Shown: positions 1 to 63,775, counted from the stretch's first letter. The stretch: DNA of 64,000 nt from Mytilus trossulus (GCF_036588685.1 NC_086374.1:20212001-20276000), one strand, 5' to 3'. The notes: generated by a model not told the origin, from the letters alone. Made by a program: numbers and translations.

Positions 1-292
1 GGATTTAATTTGTAATAATTTTCCAAATTAGAGTAACAGTTTTCAGTTATATTTATGTAAAATACTTCAAAAGCAGAATGATCCCTGAACTTAATTTTGT
101 TCAATTATATTCAAGGCAGCATATCAAAGATGATGCCTTAGCTGAATAATACTAATCACAAAGAAAAGTAAATACATGTGTTTATTACTATTTTGCTAGA
201 AGAAAAGATGATTCATGTGTTGAATATTATATTGTCAAAAATACAGTTAATTTGTTTGGTAAGTTTGTAATATTTAAACATTTTTGTTATAG

Positions 293-364
293 GATCAACT
301 GGTAAAATTGCAACAACAACGCCAGTTGTAGCTACAAGTCCTTCTCCTGGAATATCAAGTACAA
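293..364 (+). CDS. Exon L2, type A (representative): linker GSTGKIATTTPVVATSPSPGISST
   Basis: tttttgttatag|GATCAACT...AGTACAA|gtaaga; 72 nt, phase 1-1; recurs every unit (e.g. 1821). Confidence 0.88.
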
Positions 365-3300
365 GTAAGAATGAACTTTGATTTTTTTTGTTGCTTGATT
401 TTTTTTATGTTAATGAGACTAAAATATATATTGTTTTGGAAAATTCAATAAATAAAATGCAAATAATTTTTCAAGAATGAAAATGTTAATGCATGACAGT
501 TTTTTGTATAGAGTGAGTACAGTATTTTGTTAAAGGCGGTTATAACAATGACATTTTTGGTTTTTAGAGATATCGACAACTACGCCAATTTGTGAAGAAA
601 CAGATGGAATGGGTTCAATAACAACAATACCATCAACAGAAATTACATCTAATGACAAAAAGGCAGATATTGAAAATCTACGACCTTCGTCTAAAACACC
701 CTTTAAAAGCTCCGAAGGACAAGTGGTTATAGAGTACATGCCTTCAAAGACGAGACCAATTGCCAACGTTGAACTGGTTTCTACTGATAATATCAAGACG
801 TATACAGTACAATTCTTTAATGCAGATGGAACTGTGACAACTCGAAAGGTTTGTATAACTTACTCCAAATCATTAAGTTTTAACTAATCAATTTTAATTG
901 ATTCTTCTTTAAAAAGAATGTGGAATATTAAACAAGACCAATTTTTCCATGTTATGTTTCAAATGTGTATTTTTCTTTCGGTAGGTTAAAGTAGGCGAAA
1001 AGGCTACAAGCATTGGAACCAAGCCTGATGTGAGAAAGGTAACTGTAATTATTACACCTGACGACAAAGAAGATTCTTACAGACCTGTACAGCTCCAACT
1101 AAGCGTCCATGCCTGTTTTGAAGTCAGTAAGTAATGAAAAGCAATAGTTACTTACTTGAAGATATATGTTTTGTATGGTGTTACAGTAGTATAATACAGA
1201 TGTACTGCAGATATCTTACAGGTTCCATTTTGAAATGAAAGTTTGCTCATGTTAATCTGTTTTAATTTTGTCAAAACCTGCTGGTTAATGGTGTTTGATA
1301 TGTCCTTGTAACATAAGAGTTGTTTGCCTTGAATAATGAATTAACCTTTTTTTGTTTAGCTTCTACGCCTATTCCAAGTACAACAGCAGTCCCACAAAAA
1401 GCATCCACAACAGTTGTCACTACAGCCGTGGTTTCACCAACACCTACAGCTACACCCTCTATAATAAGTGAAGCTACTACAACATTGCAAGGTAAAGGAT
1501 TTAATTTGTAATAATTTTCCAAATTAGAGTAACAGTTTTCAGTTATATTTATGTAAAATACTTCAAAAGCAGAATGATCCCTGAACTTAATTTTGTTCAA
1601 TTATATTCAAGGCAGCATATCAAAGATGATGCCTTAGCTGAATAATACTAATCACAAAGAAAAGTAAATACATGTGTTTATTACTATTTTGCTAGAAGAA
1701 AAGATGATTCATGTGTTGAATATTATATTGTCAAAAATACAGATAATACAATTTTTGAATTTGAACAAATTATTAATTTGTTTGGTATGTTTGTATAATA
1801 TTTAAACATTTTTGTTATAGGATCAACTGGTAAAATTGCAACAACAACGCCAGTTGTAGCTACAAGTCCTTCTCCTGGAATATCAAGTACAAGTAAGAAT
1901 GAACTTTGATTTTTTTTGTTGCATGATTTTTTTTATGTTAATGAGACTAAAATATATATTGTTTTGGAAAATTCAATAAATAAAATGCAAATAATTTTTC
2001 AAGAATGAAAATGTAAATGCATGCCAGTTTTTTTATAGAGTGAGTACAGTATTTTGTTAAAGGCGGTTATAACAATGACATTTTTGGTTTTTAGAGATAT
2101 CGACAACTACGCCAATTTGTGAAGAAACAGATGGAATGGGTTCAATAACAACAATACCATCAACAGAAATTACATCTAATGACAAAAAGGCAGATATTGA
2201 AAATCTACGACCTTCGTCTAAGACACCTTTTAAAAGCTCCGAAGGACAAGTGGTTATAGAGTACATGCCTTCAAAGACGAGACCAATTGCCAACGTTGAA
2301 CTGGTTTCTACTGATAATATCAAGACGTATACAGTACAATTCTTTAATGCAGATGGAACTGTGACAACTCGAAAGGTTTGTATAACTTACTCCAAATCAT
2401 TAAGTTTTAACTAATCAATTTTAATTGATTCTTCTTTAAAAAGAATGTGGAATATTAAACAAGACCAATTTTTCCATGTTATGTTTCAAATGTGTATTTT
2501 TCTTTCGGTAGGTTAAAGTAGGCGAAAAGGCTACAAGCAAGCCTGATGTGAGAAAGGTAACTGTTATTATTACACCTGATGACAAAGAAGATTCTTACAG
2601 ACCTGTACAGCTCCAACTAAGCGTCCATGCCTGTTTTGAAGTCAGTAAGTAATGAAAAGCAATAGTTACTTACTTGAAGATATATGTTTTGTATGGTGTT
2701 ACAGTAGTATAATACAGATGTACTGCAGATATCTTACAGGTTCCATTTTGAAATGAAAGTTTGCTCATGTTAATCTGTTTTAATTTTGTCAAAACCTGCT
2801 GGTTAATGGTGTTTGATATGTCCTTGTAACATAAGAGTTGTTTGCCTTGAATAATGAATTAACCTTTTTTTGTTTAGCTTCTACGCCTATTCCAAGTACA
2901 ACAGCAGTCCCACAAAAAGCATCCACAACAGTTGTCACTACAGCCGTGGTTTCACCAACACCTACAGCTACACCCTCTATAATAAGTGAAGCTACTACAA
3001 CATTGCATGGTAAAGGATTTAATTTGTAATAATTTTCCAAATTAGAGTAACAGTTTTCAGTTATATTTATGTAAAATACTTCAAAAGCAGAATGATCCCT
3101 GAACTTAATTTTGTTCAATTATATTCAAGGCAGCATATCAAAGATGATGCCTTAGCTGAATAATACTAATCACAAAGAAAAGTAAATACATCTGTTAAAT
3201 ACTATTTTGCTAGAAGAAAAGATGATTCATGTGTTGAATATTATATTGTCAAAAATACAGTTAATTTGTTTGGTAGGTTTGTAATATTTAAACATTTTTG

Positions 3301-6300
3301 TTATAGGATCAACTGGTAAAATTGCAACAACAACGCCAGTTGTAGCTACAAGTCCTTCTCCTGGAATATCAAGTACAAGTAAGAATGAACTTTGATTTTT
3401 TTTGTTGCTTGATTTTTTTTATGTTAATGAGACTAAAATATATATTGTTTTGGAAAATTCAATAAATAAAATGCAAATAATTTTTCAAGAATGAAAATGT
3501 TAATGCATGCCAGTCTTTTTATAGAGTGAGTACAGTATTTTGTTAAGGGCGGTTATAACAATGACATTTTTGGTTTTTAGAGATATCGACAACTACGCCA
3601 ATTTGTGAAGAAACAGATGGAATGGGTTCAATAACAACAATACCATCAACAGAAATTACATCTAATGACAAAAAGGCAGATATTGAAAATCTACGACCTT
3701 CGTCTAAGACACCTTTTAAAAGCTCCGAAGGACAAGTGGTTATAGAGTACATGCCTTCAAAGACGAGACCAATTGCCAACGTTGAACTGGTTTCTACTGA
3801 TAATATCAAGACGTATACAGTACAATTCTTTAATGCAGATGGAACTGTGACAACTCGAAAGGTTTGTATAACTTACTCCAAATCATTAAGTTTTAACTAA
3901 TCAATTTTAATTGATTCTTCTTTAAAAAGAATGTGGAATATTAAACAAGACCAATTTTTCCATGTTATGTTTCAAATGTGTATTTTTCTTTCGGTAGGTT
4001 AAAGTAGGCGAAAAGGCTACAAGCATTGGAACCAAGCCTGATGTGAGAAAGGTAACTGTAATTATTACACCTGATGACAAAGAAGATTCTTACAGACCTG
4101 TACAGCTCCAACTAAGCGTCCATGCCTGTTTTGAAGTCAGTAAGTAATGAAAAGCAATAGTTACTTACTTGAAGATATATGTTTTGTATGGTGTTACAGT
4201 AGTATAATACAGATGTACTGCAGATATCTTACAGGTTCCATTTTGAAATGAAAGTTTGCTCATGTTAATCTGTTTTAATTTTGTCAAAACCTGCTGGTTA
4301 ATGGTGTTTGATATGTCCTTGTAACATAAGAGTTGTTTGCCTTGAATAATGAATTAACCTTTTTTTGTTTAGCTTCTACGCCTATTCCAAGTACAACAGC
4401 AGTCCCACAAAAAGCATCCACAACAGTTGTCACTACAGCCGTGGTTTCACCAACACCTACAGCTACACCCTCTATAATAAGTGAAGCTACTACAACATTG
4501 CAAGGTAAAGGATTTAATTTGTAATAATTTTCCAAATTAGAGTAACAGTTTTCAGTTATATTTATGTAAAATACTTCAAAAGCAGAATGATCCCTGAACT
4601 TAATTTTGTTCAATTATATTCAAGGCAGCATATCAAAGATGATGCCTTAGCTGAATAATACTAATCACAAAGAAAAGTAAATACATGTGTTAAATACTAT
4701 TTTGCTAGAAGAAAAGATGATTCATGTGTTGAATATTATATTGTCAAAAATACAGATAATACAATTTTTGAATTTGAACAAATTATTAATTTGTTTGGTA
4801 TGTTTGTATAATATTTAAACATTTTTGTTATAGGATCAACTGGTAAAATTGCAACAACAACGCCAGTTGTAGCTACAAGTCCTTCTCCTGGAATATCAAG
4901 TACAAGTAAGAATGAACTTTGATTTTTTTTGTTGCTTGATTTTTTTTATGTTAATGAGACTAAAATATATATTGTTTTGGAAAATTCAATAAATAAAATG
5001 CAAATAATTTTTCAAGAATGAAAATGTTAATGCATGCCAGTTTTTTTATAGAGTGAGTACAGTATTTTGTTAAAGGCGGTTATAACAATGACATTTTTGT
5101 TTTTTAGAGATATCGACAACTACGCCAATTTGTGAAGAAACAGATGGAATGGGTTCAATAACAACAATACCATCAACGGAAATTACATCTAATGACAAAA
5201 AGGCAGATATTGAAAATCTACGACCTTCGTCTAAGACACATTTTAAAAGCTCCGAAGGACAAGTGGTTATAGAGTACATGCCTTCAAAGACGAGACCAAT
5301 TGCTAACGTTGAACTGGTTTCTACTGATAATATCAAGACGTATACAGTACAATTCTTTAATGCAGATGGAACTGTGACAACTCGAAAGGTTTGTATAACT
5401 TACTCCAAATCATTAAGTTTTAACTAATCAATTTTAATTGATTCTTCTTTAAAAAGAATGTGGAATATTAAACAAGACCAATTTTTCCATGTTATGTTTC
5501 AAATGTGTATTTTTCTTTCGGTAGGTTAAAGTAGGCGAAAAGGCTACAAGCATTGGAACCAAGCCTGATGTGAGAAAGGTAACTGTAATTATTACACCTG
5601 ATGACAAAGAAGATTCTTACAGACCTGTACAGCTCCAACTAAGCGTCCATGCCTGTTTTGAAGTCAGTAAGTAATGAAAAGCAATAGTTACTTACTTGAA
5701 GATATATGTTTTGTATGGTGGTACAGTAGTATAATACAGATGTACTGCAGATATCTTACAGGTTCAATTTTGAAATGAAAGTTTGCTCATGTTAATCTGT
5801 TTTAATTTTGTCAAAACCTGCTGGTTAATGGTGTTTGATATGTCCTTGTAACATAAGAGTTGTTTGCCTTGAATAATGAATTAACCTTTTTTTGTTTAGC
5901 TTCTACGCCTATTCCAAGTACAACAGCAGTCCCACAAAAAGCATCCACAACAGTTGTCACTACAGCCGTGGTTTCACCAACACCTACAGCTACACCCTCT
6001 ATAATAAGTGAAGCTACTACAACATTGCAAGGTAAAGGATTTAATTTGTAATAATTTTCCAAATTAGAGTAACAGTTTTCAGTTATATTTATGTTAAATA
6101 CTTCAAAAGCAGAATGATCCCTGAACTTAATTTTGTTCAATTATATTCAAGGCAGCATATCAAAGATGATGCCTTAGCTGAATAATACTAATCACAAAGA
6201 AAAGTAAATACATGTGTTAAATACTATTTTGCTAGAAGAAAAGATGATTCGTGTGTTGAATATTATATTGTCAAAAATACAGATAATACAATTTTTGAAT

Positions 6301-9300
6301 TTGAACAAATTATTAATTTGTTTGGTATGTTTGTATAATATTTAAACATTTTTGTTATAGGATCAACTGGTAAAATTGCAACAACAACGCCAGTTGTAGC
6401 TACAAGTCCTTCTCCTGGAATATCAAGTACAAGTAAGAATGAACTTTGATTTTTTTTGTTGCTTGATTTTTTTTATGTTAATGAGACTAAAATATATATT
6501 GTTTTGGAAAATTCAATAAATAAAATGCAAATAATTTTTTCAAGAATGAAAATGTTAATGCATGCCAGTTTTTTTATAGAGTGAGTACAGTATTTTGTTA
6601 AAGGCGGTTATAACAATGACATTTTTGGTTTTTAGAGATATCGACAACTACGCCAATTTGTGAAGAAACAGATGGAATGGGTTCAATAACAACAATACCA
6701 TCAACAGAAATTACATCTAATGACAAAAAGGCAGATATTGAAAATCTACGACCTTCGTCTAAGACACCTTTTAAAAGCTCCGAAGGACAAGTGGTTATAG
6801 AGTACATGCCTTCAAAGACGAGACCAATTGCCAACGTTGAACTGGTTTCTACTGATAATATCAAGACGTATACAGTACAATTTTTTAATGCAGATGGAAC
6901 TGTGACAACTCGAAAGGTTTGTATAACTTACTCCAAATCATTAAGTTTTAACTAATCAATTTTAATTGATTCTTCTTTAAAAAGAATGTGGAATATTAAA
7001 CAAGACCAATTTTTCCATGTTATGTTTCAAATGTGTATTTTTCTTTCGGTAGGTTAAAGTAGGCGAAAAGGCTACAAGCATTGGAACCAAGCCTGATGTG
7101 AGAAAGGTAACTGTAATTATTACACCTGATGACAAAGAAGATTCTTACAGACCTGTACAGCTCCAACTAAGCGTCCATGCCTGTTTTGAAGTCAGTAAGT
7201 AATGAAAAGCAATAGTTACTTACTTGAAGATATATGTTTTGTATGGTGTTACAGTAGTATAATACAGATGTACTGCAGATATCTTACAGGTTCCATTTTG
7301 AAATGAAAGTTTGCTCATGTTAATCTGTTTTAATTTTGTCAAAACCTGCTGGTTAATGGTGTTTGATATGTCCTTGTAACATAAGAGTTGTTTGCCTTGA
7401 ATAATGAATTAACCTTTTTTTGTTTAGCTTCTACGCCTATTCCAAGTACAACAGCAGTCCCACAAAAAGCATCCACAACAGTTGTCACTACAGCCGTGGT
7501 TTCACAAACACCTACAGCTACACCCTCTATAATAAGTGAAGCTACTACAACATTGCATGGTAAAGGATTTAATTTGTAATAATTTTCCAAATTAGAGTAA
7601 CAGTTTTCAGTTATATTTATGTAAAATACTTCAAAAGCAGAATGATCCCTGAACTTAATTTTGTTCAATTATATTCAAGGCAGCATATCAAAGATGATGC
7701 CTTAGCTGAATAATACTAATCACAAAGAAAAGTAAATACATGTGTTAAATACTATTTTGCTAGAAGAAAAGATGATTCATGTGTTGAATATTATATTGTC
7801 AAAAATACAGTTAATTTGTTTGGTAGGTTTGTAATATTTAAACATTTTTGTTATAGGATCAACTGGTAAAATTGCAACAACAACGCCAGTTGTAGCTACA
7901 AGTCCTTCTCCTGGAATATCAAGTACAAGTAAGAATGAACTTTGATTTTTTTTGTTGCTTGATTTTTTTTATGTTAATGAGACTAAAATATATATTGTTT
8001 TGGAAAATTCAATAAATAAAATGCAAATAATTTTTTCAAGAATGAAAATGTTAATGCATGCCAGTTTTTTTATAGAGTGAGTACAGTATTTTGTTAAAGG
8101 CGGTTATAACAATGACATTTTTGGTTTTTAGAGATATCGACAACTACGCCAATTTGTGAAGAAACAGATGGAATGGGTTCAATAACAACAATACCATCAA
8201 CAGAAATTACATCTAATGACAAAAAGGCAGATATTGAAAATCTACGACCTTCGTCTAAGACACCTTTTAAAAGCTCCGAAGGACAAGTGGTTATAGAGTA
8301 CATGCCTTCAAAGACGAGACCAATTGCCAACGTTGAACTGGTTTCTACTGATAATATCAAGACGTATACAGTACAATTCCTTAATGCAGATGGAACTGTG
8401 ACAACTCGAAAGGTTTGTATAACTTACTCCAAATCATTAAGTTTTAACTAATCAATTTTAATTGATTCTTCTTTAAAAAGAATGTGGAATATTAAACAAG
8501 ACCAATTTTTCCATGTTATGTTTCAAATGTGTATTTTTCTTTCGGTAGGTTAAAGTAGGCGAAAAGGCTACACGCATTGGAACCAAGCCTGATGTGAGAA
8601 AGGTAACTGTAATTATTACACCTGATGACAAAGAAGATTCTTACAGACCTGTACAGCTCCAACTAAGCGTCCATGCCTGTTTTGAAGTCAGTAAGTAATG
8701 AAAAGCAATAGTTACTTACTTGAAGATATATGTTTTGTATGGTGTTACAGTAGTATAATACAGATGTACTGCAGATATCTTACAGGTTCAATTTTGAAAT
8801 GAAAGTTTGCTCATGTTAATCTGTTTTAATTTTGTCAAAACCTGCTGGTTAATGGTGTTTGATATGTCCTTGTAACATAAGAGTTGTTTGCCTTGAATAA
8901 TGAATTAACCTTTTTTTGTTTAGCTTCTACGCCTATTCCAAGTACAACAGCAGTCCCACAAAAAGCATCCACAACAGTTGTCACTACAGCCGTGGTTTCA
9001 CAAACACCTACAGCTACACCCTCTATAATAAGTGAAGCTACTACAACATTGCAAGGTAAAGGATTTAATTTGTAATAATTTTCCAAATTAGAGTAACAGT
9101 TTTCAGTTATATTTATGTAAAATACTTCAAAAGCAGAATGATCCCTGAACTTAATTTTGTTCAATTATATTCAAGGCAGCATATCAAAGATGATGCCTTA
9201 GCTGAATAATACTAATCACAAAGAAAAGTAAATACATGTGTTAAATACTATTTTGCTAGAAGAAAAGATGATTCATGTGTTGAATATTATATTGTCAAAA

Positions 9301-54300: not shown

Positions 54301-57300
54301 TGGAACTAAACCTGACGTTAGAAAAGTGAATGTAATAATCACACCAGATGACAAGGAAGATTCTTACAAACCTGTACAACTACAATTGAGTGTCCATGCT
54401 TGTTTTGAAGTCAGTAAGTAGAGAATATACACAGGTGTTTTAACTGCAGATGTATATCTGTTTAAATAAACCGTCGTATAGTCTATTTGTCTGTTAAGTG
54501 TCTAAGTGAGTTTTGTTAAGATTAGACGTTACGTACAGAAAAAAATTATGATCAATTTGAATACATTGTCGTGGTCGATCCAAAGGATTTTTAAAAGTTT
54601 CTTGTCTATAATAATTGAATGCTGATCAAGTTTTGTTTAATTAATTCTTTTAGTTTCTACGACAATTCCAAGTACAACAACAGTTCCACAGACACCTGTT
54701 TCAGCAGTTATCACTACAGCCAAGATTACAGAAACACCTACAGCCACACCCGAAATTACAACTGAAACTATTCAAACATTAAGCGGTAATTATTAAAAAA
54801 AACTTTCATAGTTTTGATGAAATTTTCTGATTAATTTTTAAGCAGCGTAAAGTCATATCTAAGTAAATGATTACTAATCAAAAGGAGAGTCATTAATGTT
54901 TAATATTTTACAAGGATATTTTTGAAAGAATTTAAAGTTGAAACATTTGTAAAATAAAAAGATGCGAAAAAAATTGAAAACGTTTAAGTTGTCTGCTATA
55001 CTTGACTTTCAATAATAATTTTTCAGTAACAAGCGGAAAAGTTACAACACCAACTCTAGTGTCAACGACAAGTCCATCTCCTGGAATTTCAATTACTTGT
55101 AAGTATGATTTTTTCAGTTTTTCTTGTAACATTTGTTTGTTTTATTTTCGCACATTCACATCATAATTGCTGAATTTATTTCGACAGTTAACAATTAGCC
55201 TGTCAATACAACGGATCAAGCTCCTTAGTGAGTTGATGCCATTGTCTCATCTTTTTGTGCTGTATTCCTTGATTGGATTGTCTTAATGGAGTTATACGAT
55301 TTTAACATAGGTTAACTACTGTTGTTTTGATTTTTTTGAATGAAAATCGAGTTACGTTTTCCTTTTCACAGTGTTTATGTATGAATTATAATACTAGTTT
55401 GATAATTTTTAACATGCTCAAATGTTTCTTTTCTAGCAATAGCAACAACAACTCCCATTTGTGAAGAAACGGATGGAATGGATTCAATAACAACAATACC
55501 TTCAACTGAAATTACAACAAATGACAAGAAAGGAGAAATTGAAAATCTCCGACCTTCCTCTAAGACACCATTTAAAAGTTCTGAAGAAAAACTGGTTATA
55601 GAATACGTGCCTACGAAGACAAGACCAATAGCCAATGTTGAACTGGTTTCTACTGATAATGTCAAGACTTATACAGTGCAATTCTTTAATGCAGATGGAA
55701 CCGTGACAACAAAAAAGGTTATTATGACTCCTAGAAATCAATAGGATTAACGGTTTCAAGTTTACTATTTCGTCATCAAAAACAAAATTTAATTGCTGCA
55801 AATATGGTCAGTGAAATTTGAATACTTTGCCTTGTGAGTCTGTAAACTTTATTTTTTCTGTTCTGTAGGTGAAAGTTGGCGAAAAAGCTACAAGTGTTGG
55901 AACTAAACCTGACGTTAGAAAAGTGAATGTAATAATCACACCAGATGACAAGGAAGATTCTTACAAACCTGTACAACTACAATTGAGTGTCCATGCTTGT
56001 TTTGAAGTCAGTAAGTAGAGAATATACACAGGTGTTTTAACTGCAGATGTATATCTGTTTAAATAAACCGTCGTATAGTCTATTTGTCTGTTAAGTGTCT
56101 AAGTGAGTTTTGTTAAGATTAGACGTTACGTACAGAAAAAAATTATGATCAATTTGAATACATTGTCGTGGTCGATCCAAAGGATTTTTAAAAGTTTCTT
56201 GTCTATAATAATTGAATGCTGATCAAGTTTTGTTTAATTAATTCTTTTAGTTTCTACGACAATTCCAAGTACAACAACAGTTCCACAGACACCTGTTTCA
56301 GCAGTTATCACTACAGCCAAGGTTACAGAAACACCTACAGCCACACCCGAAATTACAACTGAAACTATTCAAACATTAAGCGGTAATTATTAAAAAAAAC
56401 TTTCATAGTTTTGATGAAATTTTCTGATTAATTTTTAAGCAGCGTAAAGTCATATCTAAGTAAATGATTACTAATCAAAAGGAGAGTCATTAATGTTTAA
56501 TATTTTACAAGGATATTTTTGAAAGAATTTAAAGTTGAAACATTTGTAAAATAAAAAGATGCGAAAAAAATTGAAAACGTTTAAGTTGTCTGCTATACTT
56601 GACTTTCAATAATAATTTTTCAGTAACAAGCGGAAAAGTTACAACACCAACTCTAGTGTCAACGACAAGTCCATCTCCTGGAATTTCAATTACTTGTAAG
56701 TATGATTTTTTCAGTTTTTCTTGTAATATTTGTTTGTTTTATTTTCGCACATTCACATCATAATTGCTGAATTTATTTCGACAGTTAACAATAAGCCTGT
56801 CAATACAACGGATCAAGCTCCTTAGTGAGTTGATGCCATTGTCTCATCTTTTTGTGCTGTATTCCTTGATTGGATTGTCTTAATGGAGTTATACGATTTT
56901 AACATAGGTTAACTACTGTTGTTTTGATTTTTTTGAATGAAAATCGAGTTACGTTTTCCTTTTCACAGTGTTTATGTATGAATTATAATACTAGTTTGAT
57001 AATTTTTAACATGCTCAAATGTTTCTTTTGTAGCAATAGCAACAACAACTCTCATTTGTGAAGAAACGGATGGAATGGATTCAATAACAACAATACCTTC
57101 AACTGAAATTACAACAAATGACAAGAAAGGAGAAATTGAAAATCTCCGACCTTCCTATAAGACACCATTTAAAAGTTCTGAAGAAAAACTGGTTATAGAA
57201 TACGTGCCTACGAAGACAAGACCAATAGCCAATGTTGAACTGGTTTCTACTGATAATGTCAAGACTTATACAGTGCAATTCTTTAATGCAGATGGAACCG

Positions 57301-60300
57301 TGACAACAAAAAAGGTTATTATGACTCCTAGAAATCGATAGGATTAACGGTTTCAAGTTTACTATTTCGTCATCAAAAACAAAATTTAATTGCTGCAAAT
57401 ATGGTCAGTGAAATTTGAATACTTTGCCTTGTGAGTCTGTAAACTTTATTTTTTCTGTTCTGTAGGTGAAAGTTGGCGAAAAAGCTACAAGTATTGGAAC
57501 TAAACCTGACGTAAGAAAAGTGAATGTAATAATCACACCAGATGACAAGGAAGATTCTTACAAACCTGTACAACTACAATTGAGTGTCCATGCTTGTTTT
57601 GAAGTCAGTAAGTAGAGAATATACACAGGTGTGTTAACTGCAGATGTATATCTGTTTAAATAAACCGTCGTAAAGTCTATTTGTCTGTTAAGTGTCTAAG
57701 TGAGTTTTGTTAAGATTAGACGTTACGTACAGAAAAAAAATATGATCAATTTGAATACATTGTCGTGGTCGATCCAAAGGATTTTTAAAAGTTTCTTGTC
57801 TATAATAATTGAATGCTGATCAAGTTTTGTTTAATTAATTCTTTTAGTTTCTACGACAATTCCAAGTACAACAACAGTTCCACAGACACCTGTTTCAGCA
57901 GTTATCACTACAGCCAAGGTTACAGAAACACCTACAGCCACACCCGAAATTACAACTGAAACTATTCAAACATTAAGCGGTAATTATTAAAAAAAACTTT
58001 CATAGTTTTGATGAAATTTTCTGATTAATTTTTAAGCAGCGTAAAGTCATATCTAAGTAAATGATTACTAATCAAAAGAAGAGTCATTAATGTTTAATAT
58101 TTTACAAGGATATTTTTGAAAGAATTTAAAGTTGAAACATTTGTAAAATAAAAAGATGCGAAAAAAATTGAAAACGTTTAAGTTGTCTGCTATACTTGAC
58201 TTTCAATAATAATTTTTCAGTAACAAGCGGAAAAGTTACAACACCAACTCTAGTGTCAACGACAAGTCCATCTCCTGGAATTTCAATTACTTGTAAGTAT
58301 GATTTTTTCAGTTTTTCTTGTAATATTTGTTTGTTTTATTTTCGCACATTCACATCATAATTGCTGAATTTATTTCGACAGTTAACAATTAGCCTGTCAA
58401 TACAACGGATCAAGCTCCTTAGTGAGTTGATGCCATTGTCTCATCTTTTTGTGCTCTATTCCTTGATTGGATTGTCTTAATGGAGTTATACGATTTTAAC
58501 ATAGGTTAACTACTGTTGTTTTGATTTTTTTGAATGAAAATCGAGTTACGTTTTCCTTTTCACAGTGTTTATGTATGAATTATAATACTAGTTTGATAAT
58601 TTTTAACATGCTCAAATGTTTCTTTTGTAGCAATAGCAACAACAACTCCCATTTGTGAAGAAACGGATGGAATGGATTCAATAACAACAATACCTTCAAC
58701 TGAAATTACAACAAATGACAAGAAAGGAGAAATTGAAAATCTCCGACCTTCCTCTAAGACACCATTTAAAAGTTCTGAAGAAAAACTGGTTATAGAATAC
58801 GTGCCTACGAAGACAAGACCAATAGCCAATGTTGAACTGGTTTCTACTGATAATGTCAAGACTTATACAGTACAATTCTTTAATGCAGATGGAACCGTGA
58901 CAACAAAAAAGGTTATTATGACTCCTAGAAATCAATAGGATTAACGGTTTCAAGTTTACTATTTCGTCATCAAAAACAAAATTTAATTGCTGCAAATATG
59001 GTCAGTGAAATTTGAATACTTTGCCTTGTGAGTCTGTAAACTTTATTTTTTCTGTTCTGTAGGTGAAAGTTGGCGAAAAAGCTACAAGTATTGGAACTAA
59101 ACCTGACGTAAGAAAAGTGAATGTAATAATCACACCAGATGACAAGGAAGATTCTTACAAACCTGTACAACTACAATTGAGTGTCCATGCTTGTTTTGAA
59201 GTCAGTAAGTAGAGAATATACACACGTGTTTTAACTGCAGATGTATATCTGTTTAAATAAACCGTCGTATAGTCTATTTGTCTGTTAAGTGTCTAAGTGA
59301 GTTTTGTTAAGATTAGACGTTACGTACAGAAAAAAAATATGATCAATTTGAATACATTGTCGTGGTCGATCCAAAGGATTTTTAAAAGTTTCTTGTCTAT
59401 AATAATTGAATGCTGATCAAGTTTTGTTTAATTAATTCTTTTAGTTTCTACGACAATTCCAAGTACAACAACAGTTCCACAGACACCTGTTTCAGCAGTT
59501 ATCACTACAGCCAAGGTTACAGAAACACCTACAGCCACACCCGAAATTACAACTGAAACTATTCAAACATTAAGCGGTAATTATTAAAAAAAACTTTCAT
59601 AGTTTTGATGAAATTTTCTGATTAATTTTTAAGCAGCGTAAAGTCATATCTAAGTAAATGATTACTAATCAAAAGGAGAGTCATTAATGTTTAATATTTT
59701 ACAAGGATATTTTTGAAAGAATTTAAAGTTGAAACATTTGTAAAATAAAAAGATGCGAAAAAAATTGAAAACGTTTAAGTTGTCTGCTATACCTGACTTT
59801 CAATAATATTTTTTCAGTAACAAGCGGAAAAGTTACAACACCAACTCTAGTGTCAACGACAAGTCCATCTCCTGGAATTTCAATTACTTGTAAGTATGAT
59901 TTTTTCAGTTTTTCTTGTAATATTTGTTTGTTTTATTTTCGCACATTCACATCATAATTGCTGAATTTATTTCGACAGTTAACAATTAGCCTGTCAATAC
60001 AACGGATCAAGCTCCTTAGTGAGTTGATGCCATTGTCTCATCTTTTTGTGCTGTATTCCTTGTTGGATTGTCTTAATGGAGTTATACGATTTTAACATAG
60101 GTTAACTACTGTTGTTTTGATTTTTTTGAATGAAAATCGAGTTGCGTTTTCCTTTTCACAGTGTTTATGTATGAATTATAATACTTGTTTGATAATTTTT
60201 AACATGCTAAAATGTTTCTTTTGTAGCAATAGCAACAACAACTCCCATTTGTGAAGAAACGGATGGAATGGATTCAATAACAACAATACCTTCAACTGAA

Positions 60301-63300
60301 ATTACAACAAATGACAAGAAAGGAGAAATTGAAAATCTCCGACCTTCCTCTAAGACACCATTTAAAAGTTCTGAAGAAAAACTGGTTATAGAATACGTGC
60401 CTACGAAGACAAGACCAATAGCCAATGTTGAACTGGTTTCTACTGATAATGTCAAGACTTATACAGTGCAATTCTTTAATGCAGATGGAACCGTGACAAC
60501 AAAAAAGGTTATTATGACTCCTAGAAATCAATAGGATTAACGGTTTCAAGTTTACTATTTCGTCATCAAAAACAAAATTTAATTGCTGCAAATATGGTCA
60601 GTGAAATTTGAATACTTTGCCTTGTGAGTCTGTAAACTTTATTTTTTCTGTTCTGTAGGTGAAAGTTGGCGAAAAAGCTACAAGTGTTGGAACTAAACCT
60701 GACGTAAGAAAAGTGAATGTAATAATCACACCAGATGACAAGGAAGATTCTTACAAACCTGTACAACTACAATTGAGTGTCCATGCTTGTTTTGAAGTCA
60801 GTAAGTAGAGAATATACACACGTGTTTTAACTGCAGATGTATATCTGTTTAAATAAACCGTCGTATAGTCTATTTGTCTGTTAAGTATCTAAGTGAGTTT
60901 TGTTAAGATTAGACGTTACGTACAGAAAAAAAATATGATCAATTTGAATACATTGTCGTGGTCGATCCAAAGGATTTTTAAAAGTTTCTTGTCTATAATA
61001 ATTGAATGCTGATCAAGTTTTGTTTAATTAATTCTTTTAGTTTCTACGACAATTCCAAGTACAACAACAGTTCCACAGACACCTGTTTCAGCAGTTATCA
61101 CTACAGCCAAGGTTACAGAAACACCTACAGCCACACCAGAAATTACAACTGAAACTATTCAAACATTAAGCGGTAATTATTAAAAAAAACTTTCATAGTT
61201 TTGATGAAATTTTATGATTAATTTTTAAGCAGTGTAAAGTCATATCTAAGTAAATGATTACTAATCAAAAGGAGAGTTATTAATGTTTAATATTTTACAA
61301 GGATATTGGTGAAAGAAATTTAAAGTTGAAACATTTGTAAAATAAAAAGATGCGAAAACAGTTGAAAACGTTTAAGTTGTCTGCTATACTTGACTTTCAA
61401 TAATAATTTTTCAGTAACAAGCGGAAAAGTTACAACACCAACTGTAGTGTCAACGACAAGTCCATCTCCTGGAATTTCAATTACTTGTAAGTATTATTTT
61501 TTCAGTTTTTCTTGTAATATTTGTTTGTTTTATTTTCGCACATTCACATCATAATTGCTGAATTTATTTCGACAGTTAACAATTAGCCTGTCAATACAAC
61601 GGATCAAGCTCCTTAGTGAGTTGATGCCATTGTCTCATCTTTTTGTGCTCTATTCCTTGATTGGATTGTCTTAATGGAGTTATACGATTTTAACATAGGT
61701 TAACTACTGTTGTTTTGATTTTTTTGAATGAAAATCGAGTTACGTTTTCCTTTTCACAGTGTTTATGTATGAATTATAATACTAGTTTGATAATTTTTAA
61801 CATGCTAAAATGTTTCTTTTGTAGCAATAGCAACAACAACTCCCATTTGTGAAGAAACGGATGGAATGGATTCAATAACAACAATACCTTCAACTGAAAT
61901 TACAACAAATGACAAGAAAGGAGAAATTGAAAATCTCCGACCTTCTTCTAAGACACCATTTAAAAGTTCTGAAGAAAAACTGGTTATAGAATACGTGCCT
62001 ACGAAGACAAGACCAATAGCCAATGTTGAACTGGTTTCTACTGATAATGTCAAGACTTATACAGTGCAATTCTTTAATGCAGATGGAACCGTGACAACAA
62101 AAAAGGTTAGTATGACTCCTAGAAATCAATAGGATTAACGGTTTTAAGTTTACTATTTCGTCATCAAAAACAAAATTTAATTGCTGCAAATATGGTCAGT
62201 GAAATTTGAATACTTTGCCTTGTGAGTCTGTAAACTTTATTTTTTCTGTTCTGTAGGTGAAAGTTGGCGAAAAAGCTACAAGTGTTGGAACTAAACCTGA
62301 CGTAAGAAAAGTGAATGTAATAATCACACAAGATGACAAGGAAGATTCTTACAAACCTGTACAACTACAATTGAGTGTCCATGCCTGTTTTGAAGTCAGT
62401 AAGTAAGAAATATACACAGGTGTTTTACTGCAAGAGCATCTGATATCTTACTGTTGCCTTTATTTATCGTTTTAAGATTTGTATAATTAATTTGTCTTTA
62501 GAAGGTCTATGGTGTGTCTTGTTGGCATGAAACTATTGGTAAAAAATTTTAAGTAAAATTATTATATTGTAATTTAGATTTCAAAATGCTTTGCGAAATC
62601 AAACGCTAGATTATATCAACCAACCGAACAAATAGAAACCAACTGTCATATTTTTTTACTTGGTTCAGGCAATCAGGCAAATGACAAGGACAATGGCAGG
62701 TGATCAAGATTTTATAGTACGCTAAATCTGCTACATAACAGTTGTAATTCTGTTATATTAACGAAACATAAAAAAGCAATTCCAACACACATAATTGATT
62801 TAAAAAACAATAATTGAGATCAGGCGGCACATTCTGTAATCAAACATCATATGAATCAAACACAGATGAAAGGTCAATTATATATACAAATTAAGCTAAC
62901 AAAGATGACAACACACATTTTTTTGTAGTTGATATTATATGAATTAAAGAATCAATTGTACATTCAAAGTTATAATATTTTACTGTTATTTGTGTGTTAC
63001 TTAAGAATTAAAGCATGGGGGCTTGAACATATCGTGATTTTACCACGGTTTGGCCCTTTATGACAAATATTTCACCTTGAGCAATACCGAGAGGTAAATA
63101 TCGGCATAAAGGGACAACCCGTGGTAAAGGGTTAAATATTTGTCATTCTAATAGGACAAATACTGCAATTCTGTTGGATCGGAGCGCTCTAGGTGGAGGC
63201 AAATATTTGCCGTAATCATAAATAAACGCACTATTAAATTGGTGTAAAACAAAAGAGCAAACTGAGTTAGTAGCACGTTTAAACTATTTACAATAACGTA

Positions 63301-63775
63301 TTTAGATAGTTTTTGATGAATGTAAATGATTGTTTACTTATATATGTTTTATTTGTTTAAAAATGGCTTATACCACATTTTAGCCTGTTTTTTTTTCTTC
63401 TTTTTTTTTGTGTTGTTATGATTTTCCGATTCACAAGCGTGAATTTTCCCGTAAAATGCATATATTCTTAAGTCATCGTACTATGACGTCGGGTACCTCA
63501 TTCATAAAAAAAAGGCATATGACGTGGGAGTACGATCGGAACAGCCCAGGCAATATATTCATATTTTACAACCGGTGTGTACTCAAAGAGTTTGAAAGAT
63601 GTCATGTTATAATGATATTTCATGCTTTTTGATTTCTCTTTGTCAGCTTCAACGTCAATTCCTAGTACAACTACAGTCCCACACACGTCATCAACGGGAA
63701 CCATCAAGGTCGAGATTACACCAGTAACTACATCTACACCAACAATTTCAAGTGAAACGACTACATCATCAACGG
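293..63775 (+). CDS. Internal part of a giant multi-exon mucin-like gene (~160 exons in window): 40 repeats of [S/T/P-rich linker + Cys-bounded discoidin/F5-8C-like domain], ~8,350 aa in window; 5' end not in window
   Basis: Four exons per repeat with canonical AG/GT boundaries and compatible phases (1-1, 1-0, 0-1, 1-1), 72+281+142+132=627 nt. D1 exon starts: 568, 2095, 3581, 5108, 6636, 8132, 9658, 11185, 12712, 14241, 15737, 17233, 18761, 20287, 21790, 23297, 24830, 26435, 28057, 29679, 31301, 32921, 34541, 36161, 37780, 39400, 41020, 42639, 44257, 45852, 47449, 49047, 50645, 52242, 53840, 55437, 57034, 58631, 60227, 61825. No stop or frameshift noticed in the spliced frame. The product name is inferred from composition and motifs. 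Confidence 0.88.
568..848 (+). CDS. Exon D1, type A (representative): (K)ISTTTPICEETDGMGSITTIP...NADGTVTTRK, N-terminal part of the domain
   Basis: ggtttttag|AGATATCG...CGAAAG|gtttgt; 281 nt, phase 1-0; matches ORF 609..887 up to the donor. Confidence 0.92.
985..1126 (+). CDS. Exon D2, type A (representative): VKVGEKATSIGTKPDVRKVTVIITPDDKEDSYRPVQLQLSVHACFEV, C-terminal part of the domain
   Basis: ttttctttcggtag|GTTAAA...GAAGTCA|gtaagt; 142 nt, phase 0-1; missed by the ORF track. Confidence 0.92.
1360..1491 (+). CDS. Exon L1, type A (representative): TSTPIPSTTAVPQKASTTVVTTAVVSPTPTATPSIISEATTTLQ, mucin-like linker
   Basis: ttttttgtttag|CTTCTACG...TTGCAAG|gtaaag; 132 nt, phase 1-1. Confidence 0.9.
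24830..25110 (+). CDS. Exon D1 of unit 17: A/B chimeric
   Basis: 5' part is A-type (GMGSITT...SNDKTADI...EGQVVIEY); from ~25020 codons are B-type (atagccaat, aatgtc, gtgcaa, ggaacc, actagaaag|gttagt), followed by a B-type intron. Confidence 0.88.
25641..25772 (+). CDS. Exon L1, type B (representative): ISTTIPSTTTVPQTPSSAVITTAVVSPTPTATPEIITETTQTIK
   Basis: attttgtcag|TTTCC...ATTAAAG|gtaatt; 132 nt, phase 1-1. Confidence 0.9.
26023..26094 (+). CDS. Exon L2, type B (representative): VTSEKVTTPTQVSTTSPSPGISIT
   Basis: catttttcag|TAACC...ATTACTT|gtaagt; 72 nt, phase 1-1. Confidence 0.88.
26435..26715 (+). CDS. Exon D1, type B (representative)
   Basis: ttcttctgtag|CAATAGCA...AGAAAG|gttagt; 281 nt, phase 1-0. 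Confidence 0.9.
26871..27012 (+). CDS. Exon D2, type B (representative): VKVGEKAISVGTKPDVKKVNVIITPDDKEDSYKPVQLQLSVHACFEV
   Basis: tgtcctgtag|GTGAAA...GAAGTCA|gtaagt; 142 nt, phase 0-1. Confidence 0.9.
44257..44537 (+). CDS. Exon D1, type C (representative)
   Basis: ttcttttgtag|CAATAG...ACAAAAAAG|gttagt; 281 nt. Confidence 0.9.
44689..44830 (+). CDS. Exon D2, type C (representative)
   Basis: ttctgttctgtag|GTGAAA...GAAATCA|gtaagt; 142 nt. Confidence 0.9.
45069..45200 (+). CDS. Exon L1, type C (representative): ISTTIPSTTTVPQTPVSAVITTAKVTETPTATPEITTETIQTLS
   Basis: ttcttttag|TTTCT...TTAAGCG|gtaatt; 132 nt. Confidence 0.9.
45442..45513 (+). CDS. Exon L2, type C (representative): VTSGKVTTPTLVSTTSPSPGISIT
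   Basis: aatttttcag|TAACA...ATTACTT|gtaagt; 72 nt. Confidence 0.88.
62257..62398 (+). CDS. Exon D2 of the last (40th) unit
   Basis: ctgtag|GTGAAA...GAAGTCA|gtaagt; carries ITQDD (P>Q); the downstream intron departs from the C consensus after ~30 bp. Confidence 0.9.
62399..63646 (+). other. Expanded 1248-bp intron ending the periodic array (D2-L1 introns in the array are ~233-250 bp)
   Basis: gtaagt donor at 62399; tgtcag acceptor at 63646; sequence is unique within the window. Confidence 0.8.
63039..63211. mobile_element. Inverted-repeat/palindrome cluster, probably part of a non-autonomous DNA element inserted in the intron
   Basis: Imperfect IR 63039-63077 / 63092-63128; perfect 13-bp IR 63060-63072 / 63134-63146; palindromes GAGCGCTC (63182-63189) and GGCAAATATTTGCC (63198-63211). 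Element boundaries and TSD not identified. Confidence 0.45.
63647..63775 (+). CDS. Divergent L1-type linker exon: TSTSIPSTTTVPHTSSTGTIKVEITPVTTSTPTISSETTTSST
   Basis: ctctttgtcag|CTTCAACG...TCAACGG|gtaagt; 129 nt, phase 1-1; shares IPSTTTVP with L1 and is one codon shorter. Confidence 0.85.

What the first reader, a model, noticed from the sequence alone, without database searches (positions are those of the whole stretch)
293..63775. Giant beads-on-a-string protein built from 40+ copies of a four-exon genomic module
Seen: 40 modules whose exons splice into one frame of ~8,350 codons, alternating a ~130-aa Cys-bounded domain with a ~76-aa linker of ~60% S/T/P. The window begins mid-array, so the gene is longer still. 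Established: vertebrate gel-forming mucins usually keep their PTS repeats inside one large exon; here the repeat unit is an intron-containing 1.5-1.6 kb cassette, more like the kringle IV-2 array of LPA. Inference: a secreted, heavily O-glycosylated, highly multivalent scaffold (mucus, adhesive, matrix or immune lectin-mucin) that gene predictors would probably fragment or mask as a satellite.
Basis: partly seen in the sequence, partly recalled or inferred. Interest (0 to 1): 0.85.

Follow-up and report, generated by a model that had tools for sequence, protein, structure and literature searches.

The report
Giant mussel mucin with discoidin beads
The window is the middle of a very large mussel (Mytilus trossulus) mucus-protein gene, in which a four-exon cassette encoding a discoidin-like domain plus a sugar-carrying linker is repeated about 48 times; it is real and neatly built, but it is an extreme example of a known kind of invertebrate mucin, not a new kind of system.

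Summary
The window holds 40 tandem units of 1.5-1.6 kb. Each unit has four exons of fixed length (132, 72, 281 and 142 nt, together 209 codons) with canonical AG/GT sites and compatible phases. This gives 8,356 codons in the window with no stop, and 10,028 codons over all 48 units once the 8 upstream units are added.

The domain exons are under strong purifying selection (dN/dS 0.07-0.10). The linker exons are not (0.57-0.78), but they stay about 59% Ser/Thr/Pro.

The Cys-bounded domain has no Pfam match. Its AlphaFold model is a discoidin (F5/8 type C) fold, Z 12.6 against neuropilin b1 and factor VIII C2. It shares exon lengths and phases with a genuine F5/8C domain 1.3 kb downstream.

On the same strand, EGF/VWD-C8-TIL/LDLa exons lie 112-128 kb upstream. 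TSP1/TIL/VWC/cystine-knot exons lie 57-64 kb downstream. This is the backbone of a SCO-spondin-like gel-forming mucin, collinear with "mucin-2-like" models from Patella and Lineus.

RefSeq fragments the gene. One 337-aa model starts at an internal ATG in the last unit. The M. californianus orthologue is modelled as 21 repeats of 209 aa.

No RNA evidence could be obtained, so a single transcript remains an inference. Two other first-reader notes in this scan describe similar mucins elsewhere in this genome.

The parts
1..25640 (+). Subfamily A block: 17 units of about 1.50-1.53 kb. The window starts inside a unit whose L1 exon lies just upstream. Units are about 99% identical in their exons.
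293..364 (+). Linker exon L2 of the first unit in the window: 72 nt, phase 1 to 1, Ser/Thr/Pro-rich. It recurs in every unit.
568..848 (+). Domain exon D1: 281 nt, phase 1 to 0. It holds the N-terminal Cys and the C-x4-DGM motif and makes up the first two thirds of the discoidin-like domain. The 40 copies in the window start at 568, 2095, 3581, 5108, 6636, 8132, 9658, 11185, 12712, 14241, 15737, 17233, 18761, 20287, 21790, 23297, 24830, 26435, 28057, 29679, 31301, 32921, 34541, 36161, 37780, 39400, 41020, 42639, 44257, 45852, 47449, 49047, 50645, 52242, 53840, 55437, 57034, 58631, 60227 and 61825.
   Evidence: dN/dS 0.07-0.10
985..1126 (+). Domain exon D2: 142 nt, phase 0 to 1. It is the last third of the domain and ends with the C-terminal Cys (HACFEV).
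   Evidence: The length and phases are the same as exon 2 of the neighbouring true F5/8C domain.
1360..1491 (+). Linker exon L1: 132 nt, phase 1 to 1, Ser/Thr/Pro-rich.
   Evidence: dN/dS 0.57-0.78
2512..2644 (+). The only length variant: a D2 exon of 133 nt with an in-frame 9-nt deletion.
24092..25640 (+). Hybrid A/B unit. L1, L2 and D1 are A-like (D1 97% amino-acid identity to unit 1); D2 matches unit 1 at the level of the B units (89%).
25641..43464 (+). Subfamily B block: 11 units of 1.62 kb.
43465..62398 (+). Subfamily C block: 12 units of 1.60 kb. The L2 acceptor context of the first unit is of the B type. The last unit spans 61041-62398.
61866..62105 (+). Start of the RefSeq model P0108, at an internal ATG inside the last D1 exon. 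This marks where automatic annotation cuts the gene.
63647..63775 (+). Last, diverged linker exon: 129 nt, phase 1 to 1. In P0108 it is spliced to a true F5/8 type C exon 1.35 kb downstream, outside the window at G000:C2:20277126-20277418.

Best explanation
The window is the central "mucin domain" of a very large gene of Mytilus trossulus that encodes a secreted, polymer-forming mucus glycoprotein.

The gene backbone is that of SCO-spondin-like invertebrate gel-forming mucins. The N-terminus has EGF-like, VWD-C8-TIL x3 and LDLa modules. The C-terminus has F5/8C, TSP1, TIL, VWC and a cystine knot.

In place of one large PTS exon, the middle is built from a four-exon, phase-1-symmetric cassette. 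Two exons encode a Ser/Thr/Pro linker of about 68 residues that is predicted to be disordered. Two exons encode a 140-residue divergent discoidin (F5/8 type C) domain, closed by one Cys pair (inferred to form a disulfide).

The cassette was amplified by unequal crossing-over and homogenised within three blocks. There are 48 copies here, 40 of them in the window.

The inferred product is a bottle-brush string of O-glycosylated linkers interrupted every 209 residues by a folded jelly-roll bead. Its ends would polymerise through the VWD assemblies and the cystine knot. The beads would act as spacers or as weak multivalent binding sites for glycans or particles in the mucus gel.

Shown: the exon structure, the selection pattern, the fold, homology to proteins of other lophotrochozoans, and the flanking domains. 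Inferred: expression, a single transcript, glycosylation and ligand binding.
For: - Exon grammar and open frame.
- Purifying selection acts on the domain exons and not on the linker exons. Introns carry indels while exon lengths are fixed.
- The same splice pattern and 209-aa period appear in independent gene models from M. californianus (P0104, 21 repeats), M. coruscus (P0002) and M. trossulus (P0108).
- The genome is identified as M. trossulus.
- AF2 model of P0002: the domain (residues 188-322) has pLDDT 90-97 and is all-beta, while the linkers have pLDDT below 50.
- Fold matches: Foldseek's top hits are neuropilin b1b2 and factor V/VIII C domains (E 1e-7). VIA gives Z 12.0-12.6, rmsd about 3.1 A over 124-129 of about 135 residues against neuropilin b1, FVIII C2, discoidin II and DDR1.
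- Profile comparison with the neighbouring F5/8C domain: hhalign score 31, E 3e-5, against a maximum of 19.9 in 30 shuffles.
- Exon split: D has 281+142 nt and the neighbouring true F5/8C domain has 293+142 nt, both with phases 1-0-1. Pfam confirms that F5/8C exon (29.4 bits against a cut-off of 28.2).
- Upstream on the + strand, 20083879-20099688: EGF-like, VWD (36 and 80 bits), TIL x3, C8 and LDLa x3, collinear with residues 115-1531 of Patella mucin-2-like P0107.
- Downstream on the + strand, 20332951-20340071: TSP1 x5, TIL x2, VWC (weak) and Cys_knot/DAN above cut-off.
- Patella P0107 and Lineus P0001 carry VWD x3, C8, TIL and LDLa, followed by 13 copies each of the same D domain.
- Literature: the F5_F8 domain is characteristic of lophotrochozoan mucin-like proteins, and a group of invertebrate mucins resembles SCO-spondin (PMC4948705).
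Against: - The tryptic peptides were not found in the paper library.
- All supporting protein models are computational predictions.
- The link between the array and the VWD and cystine-knot ends rests on strand, order, phase compatibility and collinearity with the Patella and Lineus models. A 42-kb stretch rich in transposon fragments (20125000-20166900) interrupts the chain of exons.
- Neither Patella P0107 nor Lineus P0001 ends in a cystine knot.
- Pfam's F5_F8_type_C model does not detect the D domain.
- Copy number in 99%-identical 1.5-kb repeats depends on assembly quality.
Confidence: 0.75

Rival explanations
1. The array exons are real and serially spliced, but the locus holds two or more separate genes. 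For example, a VWD-LDLa gene could end before the array, the array plus F5/8C could form a gene of its own, or the downstream giant-PTS exons plus TSP1/cystine knot could form another gene.
For: - There is a 42-kb gap with reverse-transcriptase fragments between the exon at 20124558 and the Z units at 20166934.
- There is about 7 kb between the F5/8C exons and the first giant PTS exon.
- The Patella and Lineus models end after D domains, without a cystine knot.
- In the Patella pedal-mucus proteome the VWD/LDLa piece (P-vulgata_3) and the TSP1/cystine-knot piece (P-vulgata_6) were recovered as separate contigs (PMC7333891).
Against: - No signal-peptide-like first exon or cystine knot was found between the two ends.
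- Every exon examined belongs to the phase-1 class, so all can be joined in frame.
- The exon after the first F5/8C domain ends in a strong GTAAGT donor whose phase fits the next F5/8C exon.
- Transcriptome contigs break at long repeats anyway, so separate contigs in Patella say little.
Confidence: 0.2
2. It is a tandem family of about 40 small genes, each unit being its own transcript that encodes one discoidin-like domain with a mucin tail.
For: The units are regularly spaced, which is also how tandem gene families look.
Against: - No unit has a start-codon exon, a signal peptide or a stop codon. The joined frame runs 10,028 codons without a stop.
- All four exon types have phases that only make sense when spliced into the next unit.
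- The M. californianus model runs through 21 units.
Confidence: 0.02
3. It is a silent or decaying exon array (a satellite of pseudo-exons), or an assembly artefact that inflates a much shorter gene.
For: Within-block identity of about 99% is the regime in which assemblers can mis-size arrays. No expression data were obtainable.
Against: - dN/dS of 0.07-0.10 between blocks with dS 0.16-0.69 shows protein-level selection after the blocks diverged.
- There is not one stop codon, frameshift or lost splice site in 192 exons.
- Three distinct subfamilies with hybrid boundary units are not what a collapse or expansion artefact produces.
- The orthologous array exists in a second species' assembly.
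Confidence: 0.03

Closest known systems
Invertebrate (lophotrochozoan) gel-forming mucin-like proteins with F5/8 type C domains, and insect hemolectin/hemocytin (Lang et al. 2016, PMC4948705)
   Same: It has VWD-C8-TIL units at the N-terminus, F5/8C domains, PTS sequence and a C-terminal cystine knot. The paper states that the F5_F8 domain is characteristic of lophotrochozoan mucin-like proteins.
   Different: The discoidin-type domain is not present once or twice. It is the repeating bead of the mucin domain, with at least 56 copies in the locus, in a diverged Trp-free form that Pfam does not recognise. No second VWD block (the 3+2 arrangement of hemolectin) was seen between the array and the cystine knot.
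SCO-spondin (vertebrate Reissner-fibre glycoprotein)
   Same: The backbone has the same order of modules: EGF/EMI-like, VWD-C8-TIL x3, LDLa repeats, F5/8C, TSP1 alternating with TIL, VWC and CTCK. Lang et al. note that invertebrate mucins group with SCO-spondins.
   Different: SCO-spondin has no mucin domain. Here, about 230 kb of PTS and discoidin-like cassettes sit between the LDLa and TSP1 parts, and there are only about 5 TSP1 repeats.
Vertebrate MUC2/MUC5AC/MUC5B with CysD domains interrupting PTS tracts
   Same: The same "beads on a string" logic applies: small folded, disulfide-closed domains are interspersed in O-glycosylated sequence between polymerising VWD and cystine-knot ends.
   Different: The bead is a discoidin jelly roll with 2 Cys, not a 10-Cys CysD. 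There are tens of beads rather than 2-9. The repeat is an intron-containing four-exon cassette rather than part of one giant exon.
LPA kringle IV-2 array
   Same: It is a tandem amplification of a multi-exon, in-frame cassette encoding one folded domain, with near-identical copies and probably variable copy number.
   Different: The protein family and function are different. The cassette here has four exons and includes a mucin linker. Copy-number polymorphism was not tested.
Automatic gene models: M. californianus XP_052090872.1 "mucin-17-like" (P0104), M. coruscus CAC5411568.1 (P0002), Patella vulgata XP_055959230.1 and Lineus longissimus XP_064639835.1 "mucin-2-like" (P0107, P0001)
   Same: They carry the same D domain. 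The Mytilus models have the same 209-aa unit (89-90% identity to the B and C units). The Patella and Lineus models give the N-terminal VWD/LDLa context.
   Different: All are unpublished computational predictions and are partial. P0104 has no signal peptide and ends in a linker. None names the domain.
Patella vulgata pedal-mucus proteins P-vulgata_3 and P-vulgata_6 (Kang et al. 2020, PMC7333891)
   Same: P-vulgata_3 has VWD x3, C8 x2, TIL x2 and LDLa x5. P-vulgata_6 has TSP1 x4 plus a cystine knot. These are the same module sets as the two ends of this locus. Both were detected in secreted adhesive mucus, and P-vulgata_3 expression was localised to the pedal sole.
   Different: Identity with the Patella homologue P0107 could not be shown. 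The peptide encoded by the published P-vulgata_3 primer is not in P0107, and no sequences were in the held supplement. This is a lead only.

Membership tests
Gel-forming mucin (sensu Lang et al.: VWD-C8-TIL units + PTS domain + C-terminal cystine knot) | Multiple N-terminal VWD-C8-TIL units | tested here: met
   Pfam on single exons found VWD at 36.2 and 79.9 bits, C8 at 37.8 bits and TIL x3 at 40-46 bits. The exons are collinear with residues 115-1531 of Patella P0107, which has 3 VWD. The third VWD is inferred from collinear weak HSPs.
Gel-forming mucin (sensu Lang et al.: VWD-C8-TIL units + PTS domain + C-terminal cystine knot) | Long Pro/Thr/Ser-rich region | tested here: met
   The linkers are 59% S+T+P and are predicted to be disordered. 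Additional single exons of 231-1,345 codons with 59-68% S+T+P lie downstream.
Gel-forming mucin (sensu Lang et al.: VWD-C8-TIL units + PTS domain + C-terminal cystine knot) | C-terminal cystine knot | tested here: met
   Cys_knot scores 24.8 bits (cut-off 24) and DAN 30.6 bits (cut-off 22) at G000:C2:20339655-20340071 on the + strand.
Gel-forming mucin (sensu Lang et al.: VWD-C8-TIL units + PTS domain + C-terminal cystine knot) | All parts lie on one polypeptide | not testable with these tools
Only strand, order, phase and collinearity support it.
F5/8 type C (discoidin) domain, Pfam PF00754 | Match to the family's sequence model above its cut-off | tested here: not met
   There was no PF00754 hit for the D1 or D2 exons or for the full-domain proteins P0002, P0104, P0028 and P0017, even at E up to 1-10.
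F5/8 type C (discoidin) domain, Pfam PF00754 | Discoidin beta-sandwich (jelly-roll) fold spanning the domain | tested here: met
   AF2 gives pLDDT 90-97. Foldseek gives probability 1.00 to neuropilin b1b2 and FV/FVIII C1-C2. VIA gives Z 12.6, rmsd 3.1-3.2 A over 125-129 aligned residues, covering model residues 187-322.
F5/8 type C (discoidin) domain, Pfam PF00754 | One Cys near each end of the domain, which form the terminal disulfide in F5/8C domains | tested here: met
   There are exactly two Cys per unit, at D1 residue 8 and D2 residue 44. In the hhalign alignment they pair with the first and last Cys of the neighbouring F5/8C domain. The disulfide itself is inferred.
F5/8 type C (discoidin) domain, Pfam PF00754 | Detectable sequence homology to a bona fide member | tested here: inconclusive
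   A profile of 112 D domains against the single neighbouring F5/8C sequence gives hhalign score 31.1, probability 74% and E 2.9e-5. Thirty shuffles gave at most 19.9 and the reversed sequence 15.8. The exon split and phases are shared. This is supportive but rests on one target sequence.
F5/8 type C (discoidin) domain, Pfam PF00754 | Ligand (lipid or glycan) binding through the loop "spikes" | not testable with these tools
   It needs a glycan array or binding assay on the recombinant domain.
SCO-spondin | VWD x3, then LDLa repeats, F5/8C, many TSP1/TIL (SCOR) repeats, VWC and CTCK | tested here: inconclusive
   All module types are present in the right order. However, only about 5 TSP1 repeats are present, and a very large mucin region that SCO-spondin lacks is inserted. 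No orthology tree was made.

The most novel reading that the evidence does not exclude
The whole + strand chain from G000:C2:20083879 to 20340071 (256 kb) may be one gene encoding a protein of roughly 23,000 residues. It would have a SCO-spondin-type polymerising backbone carrying at least 56 discoidin-like lectin beads plus about 7,000 residues of classical PTS repeats. That would make it one of the largest animal proteins. The beads would belong to a previously unnamed, Trp-free discoidin subfamily conserved across molluscs and nemerteans, and they would give mussel mucus a multivalent glycan- or particle-binding net.
Probability: 0.4. Interest if true: 0.6.

Novelty: new variant of a known kind. 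Interest (0 to 1): 0.45.

Why it matters
Mussel mucus underlies particle capture, feeding, defence against microbes and locomotion, yet its core polymers are essentially uncharacterised. Repeat-rich giant genes like this one are broken up by assemblers, transcriptome assemblies and gene predictors.

This locus gives a complete, testable blueprint of one such polymer. It shows that RefSeq currently represents it as a 337-aa "venom prothrombin activator-like" fragment.

It also defines a discoidin-like domain family that is invisible to Pfam and shared by molluscan and nemertean mucins. And it offers a clean example of mucin-domain growth by amplification of a symmetric four-exon cassette rather than by slippage inside one exon.

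It does not change the known picture that lophotrochozoan mucins combine VWD assemblies with F5/8C domains.

Tried and rejected
- TRF found no array because the period exceeds 500 nt.
- Pfam on single exons and on full-domain homologues gave only sub-threshold noise: ChuX_HutX, TRAP-delta, and APT/DAP_epimerase from summed micro-matches in the 21-repeat protein. These were rejected as chance.
- A profile search of solved-structure sequences gave only weak hits: the TXNL1 PITH domain at E 0.019 and a CBM32 at E 0.22. Both are jelly rolls, so they are consistent, but they are not evidence on their own.
- A homologue search with P0104 (residues 20-440) returned nothing, because its cluster representative is outside the length window.
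- A search with the Patella VWD/LDLa region was swamped by FCGBP-like proteins and gave no Mytilus model.
- Searches of the paper library for the accession numbers and for four tryptic peptides found nothing.
- The attempt to tie Patella P-vulgata_3 to P0107 through its published primer failed.
- The 109-aa ORFs on the minus strand over the D1 and L1 exons were considered and rejected. They have no homologues, while the + strand frames match proteins from four phyla-level lineages.
- Bacterial (P0020) and frog "titin-like" (P0021) hits of the D1 profile rest on short repeated stretches and lack the C-x-DGM motif. They were not taken as relatives.
- The joined (spliced) model protein was never sent to a search or fold tool. 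It was used only inside local scripts for frame, stop, composition and dN/dS statistics. The database proteins P0002, P0104 and P0108 served as its stand-ins.

Full report
WHAT IS IN THE WINDOW.

The window is AT-rich (31-33% GC) and contains no N. A BLASTN of the first unit against the window shows head-to-tail copies from base 1 to about 62,400. They fall into three blocks:
- A: about 1.50-1.53 kb per unit, mostly 98-100% identical to unit 1 (falling to 94-96% in the last units).
- B: 1.62 kb per unit.
- C: 1.60 kb per unit.

Blocks B and C match A only over the exons and parts of the introns, at about 77% identity.

I mapped the four translated exons with tblastn and extended each hit to the nearest phase-consistent AG and GT. 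This resolved every one of 192 exons in 48 units. Eight of these units lie upstream of the window.

Exon lengths are L1 132, L2 72, D1 281 and D2 142 nt in all three blocks. The only exception is a 133-nt D2 at 2512-2644, with an in-frame 9-nt deletion.

The phases are L1 1-1, L2 1-1, D1 1-0 and D2 0-1. One unit is therefore 627 nt, or 209 codons, and can only be read through into the next unit.

The window holds 159 such exons plus a diverged last linker exon at 63647-63775. That totals 25,068 nt, or 8,356 codons. The full 48-unit frame is 10,028 codons without a stop.

Each unit has exactly two Cys, about 130 residues apart, no Trp and no N-glycosylation sequon.

IS IT CODING?

Between blocks, the domain exons have dN/dS of 0.07-0.10 at dS 0.16-0.69. 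The linker exons have dN/dS of 0.57-0.78. Introns differ in length by up to 140 nt, whereas exon lengths never change. This is the signature of a folded domain under constraint and a composition-constrained linker. It is not the signature of a satellite.

Within blocks the units are about 99% identical. There are hybrid units at the A/B boundary and probably at the B/C boundary. This fits unequal crossing-over and conversion.

WHOSE GENOME, AND WHAT IS ANNOTATED.

The window is G000:C2:20212001-20276000 of a 1.3-Gb assembly. A 337-aa RefSeq protein of Mytilus trossulus (P0108) lies on a contig of exactly the same length, 103,707,636 bases. It maps at 95-100% identity to the last unit and to downstream exons. 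The genome is therefore M. trossulus.

P0108 begins at an ATG inside the last D1 exon (window 61866). It runs through D2, the last linker exon and a two-exon F5/8 type C domain. It then ends by reading 6 codons into an intron past a GTAAGT donor. It is named [quoted passage not shown] after its F5/8C domain.

The orthologue in M. californianus (XP_052090872.1, "mucin-17-like", P0104) is modelled as 21 perfect repeats of 209 aa with the same junctions. It is 89-90% identical to the B and C units. M. coruscus has a 392-aa fragment (P0002).

THE DOMAIN.

Pfam sees nothing in the exons or in the full-domain homologues.

A profile of seven D1-exon variants was searched against 1.84 billion proteins and found 103 relatives. 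Most are short ORFs read from genomic exons. The informative ones are long "mucin-2-like" models from Patella vulgata (P0107), the chiton Liolophura (P0014) and the nemertean Lineus (P0001), plus unnamed eukaryotic fragments from metagenomes.

I did not submit my own joined model to any tool. Instead I folded P0002 with an alignment of 26 relatives. Residues 188-322 form an all-beta domain with pLDDT 90-97, and the linkers are disordered (pLDDT below 50).

Foldseek's best matches are neuropilin b1b2 and the C1-C2 domains of factors V and VIII. The second-look aligner gives Z 12.0-12.6, rmsd about 3.1 A and 124-129 aligned residues. These run from the first to the last Cys, against neuropilin b1, FVIII C2, Dictyostelium discoidin II, DDR1/DDR2 and CBM32. 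ESM-Atlas neighbours point the same way, as leads only.

Two further observations argue for descent from an F5/8C domain rather than convergence.
- The bona fide F5/8C domain 1.35 kb downstream (Pfam 29.4 bits) is split into exons of 293 and 142 nt with phases 1-0-1. The D domain is split into 281 and 142 nt with phases 1-0-1.
- A profile of 112 distinct D domains aligns to that F5/8C sequence Cys to Cys. The hhalign score is 31 (E 3e-5), against at most 19.9 for 30 shuffles.

I therefore call it a divergent, Trp-free discoidin-like domain. This agrees with the other first-reader note on this window. It fails Pfam's own sequence test, so formal family membership is left open.

THE SURROUNDINGS.

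All features below are on the + strand.

Upstream of the window:
- 8 more A units, from 20198215.
- 7 units of a 3.6-kb cassette (20166934-20194586), each with a D domain 54% identical to the window's and one ~170-aa PTS exon.
- A lone D1-type exon at 20124558.
- Further PTS/Cys-domain, F5/8C-like and LDLa exons at 20100435-20116773.
- At 20083879-20099688, EGF-like, VWD, TIL, VWD, C8, TIL, VWD, C8, TIL and LDLa x3 exons. These are collinear with residues 115-1531 of Patella P0107.

Downstream of the window:
- F5/8C domain 1 (20277126-20277896), a short linker exon and F5/8C domain 2 (from 20279701), all in compatible phases.
- Eleven giant PTS exons of 231-1,345 codons, interspersed with an unassigned ~100-aa exon type and another D-like exon.
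- At 20332951-20340071, TSP1 x5, TIL x2, a weak VWC and a cystine knot above Pfam's cut-off.

Beyond that point the + strand mucin exons stop. A cystine-knot ORF on the opposite strand appears at 20374924-20375253.

The module order is that of SCO-spondin, with an enormous mucin region inserted. Patella P0107 and Lineus P0001 show the same N-terminal half followed by 13 D domains each.

This fits Lang et al. 2016. [quoted passage not shown]

In the limpet, a VWD x3/C8/TIL/LDLa x5 protein and a TSP1 x4/cystine-knot protein were both found in secreted pedal mucus (PMC7333891). I could not show that they are pieces of the Patella homologue.

HOW IT MOST LIKELY WORKS.

- Shown: a serially spliceable cassette array under protein-level selection. 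It encodes alternating disordered Ser/Thr/Pro linkers and discoidin-fold beads, and it is flanked in cis by polymerisation modules.
- Inferred from established knowledge of gel-forming mucins and VWF: the cystine knot dimerises the C-termini, the VWD-C8-TIL assemblies multimerise the N-termini, and the linkers are densely O-glycosylated. The product would be a net-forming bottle-brush polymer.
- Inferred from the known roles of discoidin domains and CBM32 as glycan, lipid or protein binders: the beads, one every 209 residues, either simply punctuate and stiffen the chain or provide many weak binding sites that cross-link mucin glycans or trap microbes and particles.
- Not shown: expression, tissue, glycosylation, ligand, and whether all 256 kb form one transcript. 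If they do, the protein would be roughly 23,000 residues. That is my rough sum of the exon classes listed above.

LIMITS.

- All supporting protein models are computational.
- Copy number within 99%-identical blocks depends on the assembly.

VERDICT.

The gene belongs to a known kind: the lophotrochozoan SCO-spondin-like/F5/8C gel-forming mucins. It has an unusual and previously undescribed build, with tens of copies of a four-exon linker-plus-discoidin cassette, a domain subfamily unknown to Pfam, and poor current annotation.

Two other first-reader notes in this genome describe similar discoidin or two-Cys-bead mucins, 122 kb and 2 Mb further along the same chromosome. The architecture is therefore probably a family trait in this mussel.

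Noticed in passing
window 62399-63646: The last D2-to-linker intron is 1.25 kb, against about 0.24 kb in all other units. Its core (about 62995-63260) is a dispersed ~270-bp repeat with an internal 24-nt palindrome (63039-63062 / 63105-63128). Copies at 75-84% identity are found on many chromosomes (1,627 first-look candidates). It is probably a MITE/SINE-like insertion.
   Followed up: partly
G000:C2:20278491-20278560 (L023:8491-8560): The RefSeq model P0108 ends with SKLHRC. It gets there by reading through a consensus GTAAGT donor, and the donor's phase fits the next F5/8C exon at 20279701. The annotated stop is therefore probably an artefact.
   Followed up: yes
G000:C2:20291188-20291499, 20309055-20309384, 20318319-20318615 (L020:5188-5499, L022:3055-3384, L026): A third ~100-aa exon type (motif C-x-NPKTF-x-Y-x-NRDDKDLEIKTTNGK ... 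SSWTPT) recurs between the giant PTS exons downstream. It has no Pfam match. It may be another discoidin-like variant, but it was not folded.
   Followed up: no
G000:C2:20285301-20328374: Eleven single exons of 231-1,345 codons consist of TTTVGTSQPTPTPG-type repeats (59-68% S+T+P). The same locus therefore uses both ways of building a mucin domain: giant single exons and intron-containing cassettes.
   Followed up: partly
G000:C2:20100435-20107303: Four exons carry a PTS stretch followed by a different one-Cys motif (TTTTEC-x-K...). They lie directly after the LDLa exons and may form yet another bead type at the start of the mucin region.
   Followed up: no
G000:C2:20125000-20166900: A 42-kb interruption of the exon chain contains reverse-transcriptase-like ORFs on both strands (20141052-20142017 on +, 20161186-20161575 on -). 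A lone D2-like exon lies at 20147143. It is either a transposon-filled intron or a gene boundary.
   Followed up: no
G000:C2:20374924-20375253 (-): A cystine-knot ORF lies on the opposite strand, 35 kb beyond this gene's own cystine knot. This suggests a tail-to-tail neighbouring mucin gene.
   Followed up: no
window, minus strand, e.g. 533-859 and 1274-1600: Stop-free antisense stretches of 109 codons overlie the D1 and L1 exons of every A unit. There are no homologues. They are most likely a by-product of the Thr/Ser/Pro-rich sense codons.
   Followed up: partly
G000:C2:20198215-20212000: Two of the eight upstream A units are 2.30 kb instead of 1.5 kb, because of an extra ~0.8 kb in the L2-D1 intron. 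The unit lengths (2304, 1529, 1496) repeat twice, which hints at a higher-order repeat.
   Followed up: no
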